This document shows, piece after piece, positions 13,401 to 16,400 of a stretch of 64,000 nucleotides of DNA. The position numbers were made by a program, and so were the translations under genes. The stretch spans positions 356,983-420,982 of the forward strand of contig NIVC01000632.1 of assembly GCA_002269645.1 (NCBI GenBank), in the 5' to 3' direction. The notes under the pieces are model-generated. The model searched no databases and was not told the DNA's origin. It saw only the letters and a program-made list of their open reading frames with translations. Source of the DNA: Macrostomum lignano. Lineage: Eukaryota. The first letter of the stretch is position 1; each line of letters opens with the position of its first letter.

Positions 13401-16400
13401 CTCACGGTAGATGCGATCATCACTAAATCACTAACATATATGATGAATTCAATAGACTCTGCACTTTTCAGATATCTTTACTAAACTCAAGACCCGTAAT
13501 ACCATTAATTAATTTTTACCTTTCTAAATCTTTTAAAACTGCTTACGCTTAAAAGTATAAAAGAATTGACCTAAAAAACCAATCGCACAGCACGGCACGG
13601 AGGTGTCCCAGCTGAGCAGCAGCGGACGGCAGAGCTACCGAACTCTCAAAGCCAGGGTAAAATCTGACAGTGTTGACGAGAATCAACGCAGACAGAAAAA
13701 TTTCAAATAGAAATCCGTCATGCTTCTTTCATAAGAGCTCGATCGTTTCTCTTCTCTAAACTGAATTTTCCTACTCAATTATTGATAGACAGATCAAACA
13801 GAGCCATCGGTGCTTTTCTAGCTTATAGTATTGGCTGTTAAAAGTACATAAACTGTGCCTGATTATGTCTATAATAGCTTGTTGCCACCATCCTGCATCT
13901 TTCTTGTTGTAGAACTGTTTAGTTTTACCTAAGTAATTCATCTTTTCACCAAGAAAGGCGTGCTATAAATTTTTTCCTGGCTATTCTTAGTCCGCACCAA
14001 CCCGATCCATTAAGCTTAATCAGGTCAAACAAACCAACCTTTCATTAAGTAATTATGCAAAGTGTAGAGTAAAGGTCCCGGCAAACAGCAAACAAATCTT
14101 CTCAATTATAACAAAATAAATCTGAATTCGAAAACTGGAAATCCCGCAGCTCGAAGGCGAATCCACTGGAGCCAGAGATGAGGAGCGAGAGAGGCGGTTG
14201 TTCCCAGATAAGAGTCTGGGCAACATGAAAATCACCTGCCACGACTTGACGCCAGATTTTCTCATATTTGGCACCGATGTAAGAGACTTGTATGAAAAAA
14301 CGATTAGACAGTCTCGTTAATCGGAATCTATTCCATTTTAACAAAGCGCAAATGCTCGCTTCTTTTTTTCAGACGGGCAGCGTGTACTTTTTCTACATGG
14401 AGGACTGGGAGTTCTCCCATGATATCAAGCATACCTGCGGGATAAAGAAGATCTTTCCAAATTTGTACGGCACCCGAGTGATAATCTTTGACGACAGAGC
14501 CGAGGCGTTTGTCTGCAATCCGGTGAGGGAGCCAGGTTTCTATGGTGGCTATTCTTAGTATTTTGGGGTTCTCCGATCGTTGCTATATATGTATATGCAA
14601 TTATTGAATATGCATTTAGCCTAAAATGGGAGGCGTTCTTACTGGTTGTATAGAGCTAGCTCCCCTATTGGTGGCTATTTTTAGAATCTAGGGGCACAGT
14701 TTGTGGAGTGTACATTTAGCAGAAATCCGCGCTTCATTGTCATTGGCTGCTATTTTTAGAAGTTTAAAAGGTGTACGGATTGCCTTTCCCATGAACACTA
14801 GCTGTATAGTGGCGAAAAACATTCTTCTATAATTTAAACAAATATTTCAGCTGACCGATCACATGATCCCGATACCGAACTTCAACGCGCGCACGATGGG
14901 AGCTATGTGGGATCAGAATTTTAACGATCAGGTATGTCTTCGAATACAACTTAACTGACGCATTGCTCCAAATATTTCTCATGGATTTTTGCCTACTAAT
15001 ATTAAATTTGCAGTATAATAAAGATTGTTTACCTAAAAAACAATTTCCACAGAACTTATTCGTTACTATGACTGACGTTGTCGTAGATGCTTATTATATG
15101 GAAGATGCTGTGGAAGGTAAATTAATACTGTAGTTGGCATTTTGTGGTCGGAGCAACTAACAGGTGCAATAGTAATCCAAAGCTAACTCACCGAATAGAT
15201 GGCACTTTGTGTAAATATGAAACCCCATTATAGACTAACTACTCGCTAATTCAATTTTGTAATCCCATAATTGCTTTTGATGGTTTTGCGTTACTAACCT
15301 GCCTGTTGATAATTAATCGGTTTCGTTTGGCGACGACCCTCAGAATTACTATGGTGATTCTCTGTTGTTGTTGCAAGTGAATTTAATTAACCATATGCCT
15401 TAGTGGCGGGCCACAAGACGATTCGATAATTTATTGATTAGATTCCATGATTTTGACTTAACAAAGCATTTTTAAATATTTGCAATTAGTCTACTTACAG
15501 TAGGCAAGTTAATTTTTACTAACTATAAACGCATTTCTTTTCAATTTGCAATTCCTACTTAAATTTAGTTTCTTTCTAACAAAAAACGTGACTAAACGAC
15601 TGACACAACGAACAGGAGGTCTTTATCACATTCGACGAGCACAGTGTCTTCACCCACCTGCTAGTGGCTGACGCGGTCGCCGCTGTTGCAGCCGACAGCT
15701 CAGGTGGAAAGGCGGCAGGTCAGCAGCGCTCCGCAGCCATGGCTGATGGAGAGGCCAGCTTCATTGGTGGCAGGCAAACCAAGTCTGCCGACTCAATGCA
15801 GGGGATCAGTAAGGGAGGGATAGCTCCACGCAGGCGATCAATCACTGGGGAGTTTTATGTATCGAAAGCATACTTTTCTTCTTTGGAATTCAATCCTGAT
15901 ATTGCTCCTGTTTTATCTTAATAATACTAGCTAGTCTATTGAAGTCTGAAATTTATTTCTTTTTCTTGCCAGTCCCACTAGCCTTGGGCTTGTTTATCAC
16001 ACGATTCGAGCTGCCCGCATCTCTTATAAGCTTTCACTGCTGAAATTTACTGATTGCACGCATTGGAGTTACGCTTAAATTTCAGAAGTCAAAAGTAAAA
16101 AATAATGAATTTAATAGTTTTACTACTAGACTTGATATTCTACTCAAAATCAGAAGTAGGTAGAGTTAGACTTTTTCAAAATAAATCATACAGTTAGTAG
16201 TTATTCTATCAGTTTCACTTGTGCTAGAGCAACAATCGCTACTGATTACTTCCGGATTACATAATAAGTAGTACGGTTTGCACTCGCTGTGGCTAAGCTT
16301 GCTTAAATCTGTGCTGCATTTAGTCGTGTTGACACTGATCAATTAGAGTTGAACTATTGCTATATATAGACACTAATGGAGTTTCCCCTGCCCGACCTTG

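What the first reader, a model, noticed from the sequence alone, without database searches (positions are those of the whole stretch)
15053..15808. Apparent mutually exclusive duplicated exons (11a/11b) in WDR19/IFT144
Seen: two exons between exon 10 (ends phase 0) and exon 12 (starts phase 1). 11a (15053-15116, [22 protein letters not shown]) and 11b (15616-15808, [21 protein letters not shown]...DSMQG) each have canonical splice sites and each is 1 mod 3 long. Both resemble the same human segment ([23 protein letters not shown]) and share 'DAV'. Either alone keeps the frame (4056 or 4185 nt CDS); both or neither would frameshift, the classic signature of mutually exclusive exons. I know of no described mutually exclusive splicing in this IFT-A core subunit. 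Inference: two IFT144 isoforms, perhaps for different cilia types (motile epidermal, sensory, sperm).
Basis: partly seen in the sequence, partly recalled or inferred. Interest (0 to 1): 0.75.

Follow-up and report, generated by a model that had tools for sequence, protein, structure and literature searches.

The report
Duplicated alternative exon in flatworm IFT144
The flatworm Macrostomum lignano carries two diverged copies of one small exon of the cilia-transport gene WDR19/IFT144, and only one copy can be used per working mRNA; this is a familiar kind of exon duplication in a new gene, and use of the second copy in real transcripts is still unproven.

Summary
The window is Macrostomum lignano DNA, and its WDR19/IFT144 gene has 19 exons. 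Between exon 10 and exon 12 lie two candidate exons, 11a (15053-15116, 64 nt) and 11b (15616-15808, 193 nt). Both have AG/GT splice sites, both are 1 mod 3 long, and both are homologous to the same 23-residue segment of animal WDR19.

Public protein models already contain both forms. Six of seven M. lignano models use 11a, including the three RNA-seq-based GenBank models. One UniRef model of unknown evidence uses 11b. So 11a, not 11b, is the documented exon.

11b still looks like a living exon:
- Across three homeologous loci, 11b plus about 140 nt upstream and 45 nt downstream are 1-2% diverged, while the rest of the introns are 8-10% diverged.
- Its frame and splice sites are intact.
- Its codon usage matches the neighbouring exons.

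Including both exons, or neither, gives an early stop codon. Both versions are modelled as the same two beta-strands of the second propeller. 11b adds a disordered loop of about 43 residues.

I found no docking/selector RNA pairing and could obtain no cross-species data. Verdict: a probable lineage-specific tandem-duplicated, mutually exclusive exon pair, which is a new member of a known kind. Expression of 11b and any cilia-type specialisation remain untested.

The parts
10423..21691 (+). WDR19/IFT144 gene of Macrostomum lignano (copy Mlig021619g2). It has 19 coding exons, and the CDS is 4056 nt with exon 11a.
   Evidence: The window encodes P0001 (PAA79483.1) at 100% identity. The exact exon chain was recovered with GT/AG boundaries.
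14851..14931 (+). Constitutive exon 10 (81 nt), ending in phase 0.
   Evidence: The Lingula anatina orthologue has an exon of the same size and boundaries.
15053..15116 (+). Exon 11a (64 nt), encoding [21 protein letters not shown] plus a split Gly codon. It is the documented, major exon. It keeps the ancestral 5' and 3' boundaries but has a diverged sequence and AT-rich codons (GC3 0.33).
   Evidence: It is present in 6 of 7 public models, including the 3 RNA-seq-based GenBank models. It shows 0/64 differences among three homeologous loci, while the flanking introns are 8-14% diverged. Its profile score has z=5.7. It is modelled as two beta-strands with pLDDT about 95.
15474..15615 (+). Conserved intronic block directly upstream of 11b. 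It contains TACTAAC and CTGAC branch-point-like motifs and a purine-rich, pyrimidine-poor acceptor region.
   Evidence: It is 1.4-2.1% diverged between homeologs, against 7.9-8.8% for the rest of the same intron. The 11b acceptor has the lowest pyrimidine fraction (0.35) of all 19 acceptors in the gene.
15616..15808 (+). Exon 11b (193 nt). The first 23 codons ([23 protein letters not shown]) are the copy most like the canonical animal sequence. A low-complexity extension of 41 codons follows, ending at a displaced donor.
   Evidence: It is present in UniRef model P0002. It is the top hit of 2453 six-frame peptides to the segment HMM, with profile z=7.2. It shows 2/193, 2/193 and 4/193 differences among the three loci, with no indels. 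P is about 1e-6 against the intron rate. Its GC3 is 0.66, like the neighbouring exons. It is modelled as the same two strands plus a 43-residue loop with pLDDT below 50.
15703..15704 (+). Possible internal alternative donor (CAG|GTGGAA; the exon would end at 15703). It would give an 88-nt 11b in the same phase, with a 7-residue rather than a 41-residue extension. This is speculative.
   Evidence: The sequence and frame were checked. There is no transcript evidence.
15809..15853 (+). Conserved intronic stretch of 45 nt downstream of the 11b donor.
   Evidence: It is 0-2.3% diverged, against 9-10% further downstream.
16419..16594 (+). Constitutive exon 12 (176 nt), starting in phase 1.

Best explanation
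An ancestral exon of about 67 nt in WDR19/IFT144 is a single exon with these same boundaries in the brachiopod Lingula. In the Macrostomum lineage it was duplicated in tandem, and the two copies diverged.

The two copies:
- 11a kept the ancestral boundaries, drifted in sequence, and is now the main exon.
- 11b kept more of the ancestral residues, lost the original donor, and now runs on to a donor 126 nt further downstream.

Why they are mutually exclusive:
- Each exon is 1 mod 3 long.
- Only mRNAs carrying exactly one of them keep the reading frame.
- Double inclusion stops inside 11b, and double skipping stops inside exon 12.
- Nonsense-mediated decay would be expected to remove such mRNAs.
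- Exclusivity at the level of productive mRNA therefore follows from frame logic alone. No special RNA structure is needed.

Protein consequence:
- Either exon encodes the same two beta-strands of the second beta-propeller, in the WD region that projects toward the ciliary membrane.
- 11b additionally inserts a disordered Ala/Gly/Ser-rich loop of about 43 residues.
- 11b has the weakest acceptor in the gene and conserved flanking intron. That fits a minor or conditionally activated exon.

Shown: the anatomy, the homology, the frame logic, conservation of both exons, RNA-seq-based models with 11a, and the predicted fold.
Inferred: that 11b is spliced into productive mRNA today, that NMD clears the out-of-frame forms, and any cell-type specificity.
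For: Gene models:
- One public model contains 11b and six contain 11a.
- The GenBank models come from a StringTie/TACO/TransDecoder pipeline (PMC5730564).

Homology:
- Both exons match the same profile, and both align to the same part of human WDR19.
- Lingula has one exon with identical boundaries and no second copy in the flanking introns.

Conservation across three homeologous loci:
- 11a shows 0/64 differences (P about 0.002).
- 11b shows 2/193 differences with no indels (P about 1e-6). Introns outside the conserved flanks are 9.4% diverged.
- The flanks of 11b are conserved too.
- 11b keeps its splice sites in all three copies.

Other evidence:
- 11b has GC3 0.66, like its neighbours.
- The out-of-frame combinations give stop codons.
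- Both isoform models fold into the same propeller. The 11a model has mean pLDDT 91.9 and TM 0.89 to human WDR19 8bbg_A. The 11b model differs only by a loop with pLDDT below 50 at residues 325-367.
- An evolutionary argument: 11a and 11b share no detectable DNA similarity, so the duplication is old. Yet 11b still carries the canonical VFI-FD...V-T motif. It must therefore have been under coding selection for much of that time.
Against: - No transcript or junction evidence for 11b could be obtained.
- The RNA-seq-based GenBank annotation kept alternative transcripts with different CDS, yet it lists only 11a forms for all three loci.
- The single 11b model (P0002) also skips exon 3 and adds an odd 66-nt exon. 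That is typical of ab initio or protein-guided prediction, which would favour the GC-rich, canonical-looking 11b.
- The conserved 380-nt block around 11b could be a gene-conversion tract. Conversion or mosaicism clearly occurs between these copies, since L002 is identical to the window over 4 kb.
- There are too few substitutions (2 synonymous, 2 non-synonymous) to test coding selection on 11b.
- The exon lengths differ three-fold, which is unusual for classic mutually exclusive pairs.
- No 11b-like sequence was found in 1.84 billion representative proteins.
Confidence: 0.55

Rival explanations
1. 11b is a relic. It was the ancestral exon copy, has been functionally replaced by 11a, and is no longer spliced. 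On this reading the one 11b-containing model is a prediction artefact, and the apparent conservation is gene conversion or chance among very young homeologs.
For: - All RNA-seq-based models use 11a.
- P0002 has other odd features.
- The 11b acceptor is the poorest in the gene, and its original donor is lost.
- Conversion or mosaicism between copies is evident.
- The window-L001 comparison alone is only weakly significant (P about 0.03).
Against: - 11b plus its splice sites and flanks are 1-2% diverged while the surrounding intron is 8-10% diverged, in two of three pairwise comparisons (P about 1e-6 and 3e-5).
- There are no indels in 193 nt, although the rest of the downstream intron (15854-16418) has 35-60 gap columns in about 565 nt.
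- The frame is open, and GC3 matches coding neighbours.
- The canonical residues are better kept than in 11a, despite an old duplication.
Confidence: 0.27
2. 11b is a regulatory 'poison' exon. It is included in addition to 11a, or with a shifted frame, to create a premature stop, and so tunes IFT144 levels through nonsense-mediated decay. On this reading it does not encode an alternative protein segment.
For: - Inclusion of both exons gives a stop 17 codons into 11b.
- Conservation extends into the flanking introns, as is typical of regulated non-productive exons.
- The isoform would be rare in steady-state RNA, which fits its absence from the RNA-seq annotation.
Against: - 11b is open in exactly the frame that would be read when 11a is skipped.
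- It is homologous to the segment it would replace, has coding-like third positions, and is predicted to complete the propeller blade.
- A poison exon needs none of these properties.
Confidence: 0.13
3. 11a is the artefact: a chance intronic open frame wrongly annotated, and 11b is the only true exon.
For: - 11a has intron-like composition (GC 0.375, GC3 0.33).
- A local HMM search does not find it.
Against: - 11a is in the three transcript-derived GenBank models and in three UniRef models.
- It is perfectly conserved in three loci amid diverged introns.
- It keeps the exact ancestral exon boundaries and length, minus one codon.
- Its global profile score was unmatched by 4000 null peptides.
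Confidence: 0.02

Closest known systems
Mutually exclusive exon pairs derived from tandem exon duplication. Examples are the sodium-channel SCN exon 5a/5b pairs (PMC12772994), the 29 verified clusters in C. elegans (PMC4165533) and the human catalogue (PMC8373072).
   Same: - Two adjacent homologous exons lie between the same constitutive exons.
- They have the same splice phases.
- Each replaces the same structural element of the protein.
- Joint inclusion or joint skipping breaks the frame.
   Different: - The lengths differ three-fold (64 vs 193 nt), because one copy lost its donor and runs into former intron.
- One copy (11b) has no transcript evidence yet.
- WDR19 is not mentioned in the main text of the human catalogue paper I searched.
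- No paper reporting mutually exclusive exons in WDR19 was found.
Docking-site/selector-sequence clusters, i.e. competing RNA structures such as Dscam1 and 14-3-3zeta (reviewed in PMC6071210).
   Same: It is a cluster of duplicated variable exons, and there are conserved intronic sequences next to a variable exon.
   Different: - No intron-intron pairing stands out from shuffled controls.
- The best local inverted repeats touching 11b are broken by substitutions in the homeologs.
- Only two exons are involved.
- Frame plus decay is sufficient to explain exclusivity.
The canonical single exon encoding this segment in WDR19 of other animals, for example Lingula anatina L003 9678-9744.
   Same: - 11a has the same 5' and 3' phases, the same neighbouring exon sizes (81 nt upstream) and nearly the same length (64 vs 67 nt).
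- 11b has the same 5' boundary and the conserved VF(I/V)x(Y/F)D...(V/I)(Y/F)T motif.
   Different: - Lingula has one copy only. The next-best intronic peptide scores 11, against 75 for the real exon.
- All 118 non-Macrostomum proteins aligned show a 23-residue segment here. The exception is one Gigantopelta isoform, which has an insertion at the exon end.
Poison (NMD-coupled) cassette exons.
   Same: It is a weak acceptor with conserved flanking introns, and inclusion on top of the normal exon introduces a stop codon.
   Different: 11b is a homologue of the exon it neighbours, and it is open in the productive frame.

Membership tests
Tandem-duplicated mutually exclusive exons (MXE) | The candidate exons are adjacent, within one intron interval between the same two constitutive exons. 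| tested here: met
   11a and 11b both lie between exon 10 (ends at 14931) and exon 12 (starts at 16419).
Tandem-duplicated mutually exclusive exons (MXE) | The exons are homologous to each other and to the same protein segment. | tested here: met
   Profile scores have z=5.7 and z=7.2. Direct protein similarity has p about 0.003. DNA similarity is not significant, so the duplication is old.
Tandem-duplicated mutually exclusive exons (MXE) | Both exons have the same splice phases, so either alone keeps the frame. | tested here: met
   Both start in phase 0 and end in phase 1. The in-silico spliced products read through.
Tandem-duplicated mutually exclusive exons (MXE) | The exons are of similar length. 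| tested here: not met
   They are 64 nt and 193 nt. The homologous cores are 22 and 23 codons, and 11b carries a 41-codon extension.
Tandem-duplicated mutually exclusive exons (MXE) | Transcripts containing each exon alone are observed. | tested here: inconclusive
   11a is supported by RNA-seq-based GenBank models. 11b appears only in one UniRef gene model of untraceable evidence. No read data are reachable with these tools.
Tandem-duplicated mutually exclusive exons (MXE) | Transcripts with both exons or with neither are absent or unproductive. | tested here: met
   This holds at the sequence level only. Both combinations give premature stops upstream of many exon junctions. Actual decay was not testable.
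MXE by competing RNA structures (docking/selector) | A docking site is complementary to selector sequences next to each variable exon, and the pairing is conserved. | tested here: inconclusive
   Best duplexes against dinucleotide shuffles: intron 10 with the 11a-11b intron p=0.57, intron 10 with the 11b-12 intron p=0.77, and the 11a-11b intron with the 11b-12 intron p=0.05. Inverted repeats I4 and I12 are disrupted in L001/L002. Three near-identical copies give no power to detect covariation.
MXE by steric hindrance | The intron between the two exons is too short for both to be spliced (donor to branch point under about 50-60 nt). | tested here: not met
   The intron between 11a and 11b is 499 nt.
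MXE by U2/U12 splice-site incompatibility | One exon is flanked by U12-type signals. | tested here: not met
   All four introns are GT-AG, with donors GTATGT, GTAAAT and GTAAGG. None matches the U12-type donor consensus GTATCC/ATATCC (my own knowledge of that consensus).
WDR19/IFT144 orthologue | Two N-terminal WDR19-type beta-propellers, a TPR region and a C-terminal zinc-finger region, with best hits to WDR19. | tested here: met
   Pfam PF23389, PF15911, PF24762 and PF23145 all match above their cut-offs. Identity to animal WDR19 is 55-59% over the full length. The fold matches 8bbg_A with TM 0.89.

The most novel reading that the evidence does not exclude
Macrostomum makes two IFT144 proteins that differ in one blade of the second beta-propeller, in the WD region that faces the ciliary membrane. 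One is a compact form (11a). The other (11b) carries a flexible loop of about 43 residues and a more ancestral strand sequence. On this reading the two are used in different ciliated cell types or stages, such as epidermal, sensory, protonephridial or sperm cells, to change cargo or adaptor binding by IFT-A. That would be the first isoform-level specialisation of an IFT-A core subunit by mutually exclusive splicing.
Probability: 0.3. Interest if true: 0.55.

Novelty: new member of a known kind. Interest (0 to 1): 0.35.

Why it matters
IFT-A is generally treated as one invariant six-subunit machine. If a flatworm swaps a blade of the IFT144 propeller by alternative splicing, that is a natural experiment on what this surface does. 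The IFT144 WD region projects toward the membrane and lies next to an unassigned density proposed to be a cargo or adaptor (PMC10191852).

M. lignano is transgenic-tractable and RNAi-tractable, so the idea is directly testable. If 11b instead proves silent, the locus is still a clean example of exon replacement after tandem duplication. It is also a warning for annotation: homology-guided predictors will pick the canonical-looking but unused copy.

Either way this is an incremental addition to a well-known class, not a new mechanism.

Tried and rejected
1. A protein search with a 244-aa region query returned nothing. An alignment query of both isoform regions returned only 7 distant fragments and not even P0001/P0002. 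This looks like behaviour of the word index rather than biology. No other Macrostomum sequences were obtained, so cross-species conservation could not be tested.
2. An exhaustive HMMER search of the 11b peptide against 1.84 billion representatives gave only four low-complexity matches (36-39 bits). There was no independent 11b-like protein.
3. An exact look-up of the genomic ORF covering 11b was not on record.
4. P0126, an ENA eukaryotic contig, is intronless over this region, so it says nothing about exon duplication. Dimorphilus has lost these introns.
5. The docking/selector search found no duplex stronger than shuffles, and the local inverted repeats are not conserved. I rejected this as a supported mechanism, but it is not excluded.
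6. An Rfam scan of 14800-16650 and an antisense ORF check found no RNA gene or opposite-strand gene that could explain the conserved block around 11b.
7. A local hmmsearch with a 23-column profile found 11b but not 11a. A global profile score was needed to show that 11a is homologous.
8. The Wasik et al. 2015 genome paper is not held. From memory it is the source of the UniRef models, made with a MAKER-type pipeline. The evidence behind P0002 therefore remains unverified.
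Full report
**What the window is.** A pseudo-protein built from the + strand open frames between 10.4 and 21.7 kb retrieved WDR19/IFT144 from across animals at 55-59% identity. It also retrieved a 100%-identical GenBank protein, PAA79483.1 (BOX15_Mlig021619g2), from the flatworm Macrostomum lignano. Exact mapping of that protein back onto the window gives 19 coding exons with GT-AG introns and a 4056-nt CDS. 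Pfam finds the two WDR19 beta-propellers, the TPR region and the C-terminal zinc finger.

**Check of the observation.** All the coordinates hold.
- Exon 10 is 14851-14931 and ends in phase 0.
- 11a is 15053-15116, 64 nt, with acceptor ttccacag| and donor AAG|GTAAAT.
- 11b is 15616-15808, 193 nt, with acceptor cgaacag| and donor TCA|GTAAGG.
- Exon 12 starts at 16419 in phase 1.
- Either exon alone reads through, giving a CDS of 4056 or 4185 nt.
- Both together stop 17 codons into 11b. Neither stops 20 codons into exon 12.
- One small correction: 11b ends ...DSMQGI plus a split Ser codon.

**Are both exons homologous to the same segment?** In an alignment of 125 WDR19 proteins, the 118 non-Macrostomum sequences carry a 23-residue segment of fixed length here. 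Its consensus is GVF(I/V)AYD(D/E)(D/E)K(V/I)YTYV(F/Y)xK(D/E)T(I/V)xG.
- The first 23 residues of 11b ([23 protein letters not shown]) keep the VFI-FD and V-T motifs.
- 11a ([22 protein letters not shown]) is one residue shorter and much more diverged, but it ends on the conserved Gly.
- A local HMM of the segment, searched against all 2453 six-frame peptides of the window, puts the 11b frame first (E=0.07). It does not find 11a.
- A global profile score gives 11a 28.8 (z=5.7; 0 of 4000 non-coding 22-mers and 0 of 3000 shuffles reach it). It gives 11b 39.2 (z=7.2).
- 11a against 11b directly has p about 0.003 as protein and is not significant as DNA.
- In PDB searches both versions align to human WDR19 around residues 571-593. 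The 11a version aligns as one uninterrupted stretch (126.5 bits). The 11b version is split by its insertion (117.3 bits).

So both are descendants of one ancestral exon, and the duplication is old.

**Ancestral exon structure.** In the brachiopod Lingula anatina the segment is a separate 67-nt exon with the same phases, preceded by an 81-nt exon exactly as here.
- 11a therefore keeps both ancestral boundaries, minus one codon.
- 11b keeps the 5' boundary, but its donor lies 126 nt further downstream.
- Lingula has no second copy in the flanking introns.
- Dimorphilus has lost these introns.

The duplication is thus not shared with Lingula, the only other intron-containing genome I could examine.

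**What public annotation says.** Seven M. lignano WDR19 models are in the protein collection.
- The three GenBank models (g1, g2, g3, at three loci) all contain 11a.
- Three of the four UniRef models also contain 11a.
- One UniRef model (A0A1I8I8I8, P0002) contains 11b.
- The GenBank annotation was built from RNA-seq with StringTie/TACO, a de novo transcriptome and TransDecoder. Only alternative transcripts with identical CDS were removed (PMC5730564).

11a is therefore transcript-supported, and no 11b isoform survived in that set. P0002 also skips exon 3 and adds a 66-nt exon. That is what an ab initio or protein-guided predictor would do, and I could not read the source paper. P0002 is therefore weak evidence for 11b expression.

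**Conservation among homeologs.** M. lignano is a recent polyploid, and I fetched the g3 and g1 loci as L001 and L002. The table gives divergence in the exon 9-12 region for comparisons involving L002.

| Segment | Divergence |
|---|---|
| Introns outside the conserved flanks | 8-14%, with many indels |
| Constitutive exons 9, 10 and 12 (window vs L002) | 2.2% |
| 11a | 0/64 in every pairwise comparison |
| 11b | 2/193, 2/193 and 4/193, no indels, AG and GT kept in all copies (one copy reads GTGAGG) |

- Against the intron rate of 9.4%, P is 1e-6 for 11b and 0.002 for 11a.
- The 142 nt upstream and 45 nt downstream of 11b are equally conserved (1.4-2.3%). Conservation around 11a stops within about 17 nt of the exon.
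- Extended flank conservation is, from general knowledge, a hallmark of regulated alternative exons.
- It could also be a gene-conversion tract. L002 is identical to the window from 10300 to about 14150, so conversion or assembly mosaicism does occur here.
- No Rfam family and no antisense ORF explains the block.

**Composition and splice signals.**
- GC3 is 0.33 in 11a, against 0.60-0.88 in exons 4-19. Only exons 2 and 3 are similarly low.
- 11b has GC3 0.66, rising to 0.74 in its homologous part, like its neighbours.
- The 11b acceptor has the lowest pyrimidine content of all acceptors in the gene (0.35). 11a is mid-range (0.50).
- Both donors are within the gene's range.
- A second in-frame donor exists inside 11b at 15703|15704 (CAG|GTGGAA). 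It would give an 88-nt exon. This is speculative.

**Mechanism of exclusivity.**
- The intron between the exons is 499 nt, so steric hindrance is excluded.
- All sites are U2-type GT-AG.
- Best intron-intron duplexes are no stronger than dinucleotide shuffles (p=0.57, 0.77, 0.05).
- The best local inverted repeats touching the 11b donor (I4, I12) are broken by substitutions in L001/L002.

Frame incompatibility with decay of the out-of-frame products is the simplest sufficient mechanism. The decay step itself is inferred.

**Protein consequence.** AlphaFold2 models of residues 289-718 were built with 45 homologues as the alignment.
- The 11a form has mean pLDDT 91.9, with strands at 307-311 and 315-322.
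- The 11b form has identical strands. It also has a loop with pLDDT below 50 at 325-367, after which the next strand resumes.
- The 11a model superposes on human WDR19 in IFT-A (8bbg_A, TM 0.89).
- In situ work places the IFT144 WD domains at one end of IFT-A, projecting toward the membrane. They contact IFT122-TPR and an unassigned density proposed to be cargo or an adaptor (PMC10191852).
- Caveat: the alignment is dominated by canonical sequences, so the models show compatibility with the fold, not proof of folding.

**Verdict.** The anatomy is real and non-random. The most likely reading (about 0.55) is a lineage-specific, tandem-duplicated mutually exclusive pair, in which 11a is the main exon and 11b a minor or conditional one. 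The main rival (about 0.27) is that 11b is a recently silenced relic mis-picked by one predictor. A poison-exon role (about 0.13) is also possible.

Literature searches found no report of mutually exclusive splicing in WDR19. The class itself is well known (PMC4165533, PMC6071210, PMC8373072). This is therefore a new member of a known kind and of moderate interest. Junction counts from existing RNA-seq would settle it.

Noticed in passing
window 16598-17054, 17528-17863, 18271-18907, 19581-19797, 20520-20820, 20995-21548: Six consecutive introns in the 3' half of WDR19 (introns 12 and 14-18) are largely filled by a simple or tandem repeat. These are (TGTC)x114, (CTCAC)x67, a 19/38-nt minisatellite, a 37-nt unit x5.9, (TCCTC)x60 and a 33-nt unit x16.8. 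The 37-nt unit in intron 16 itself contains CACAG|GTAAGC, so it carries repeated splice-site-like motifs.
   Followed up: partly
window 10300-14150 vs locus L002 9941-~13790: The g1 homeolog (L002) is essentially identical to the window over about 4 kb (1 difference), introns included. It then abruptly becomes 4-14% diverged in introns from exon 8/9 onward. This is either a gene-conversion tract or assembly mosaicism between homeologous copies.
   Followed up: partly
window 14477|14478 (inside exon 9): An in-frame alternative donor (CGA|GTGATA) is used by two UniRef models (P0002, P0123). It removes 15 residues ([15 protein letters not shown]) of the second propeller. It is unknown whether transcripts support it.
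   Followed up: no
window ~13591-13656 (intron 7): UniRef model P0002 inserts an extra 66-nt in-frame exon ([22 protein letters not shown]) and skips exon 3. This suggests that the model is not transcript-derived.
   Followed up: partly
protein P0017 (Gigantopelta aegis WDR19 isoform X2), alignment columns: A snail isoform carries an insertion of about 24 residues at exactly the same exon end where 11b has its extension. This is probably an alternative donor or intron read-through at the homologous exon boundary.
   Followed up: no
window ~2000-7000 (- strand) and 26700-34700 (+ strand); loci L001/L002: The neighbouring genes are a dynactin p22 homologue upstream on the minus strand and an LRR plus PP2C phosphatase (PHLPP-like) downstream. 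An EDEM-like mannosidase appears to lie on the minus strand around 52-60 kb; this last call is from reading the open frames only.
   Followed up: no
tool behaviour: Region-sized queries to the search for homologous proteins did not return P0001/P0002, although those proteins contain the query verbatim. The full-length query did return them. Negative results from short queries with that tool should not be read as absence.
   Followed up: partly
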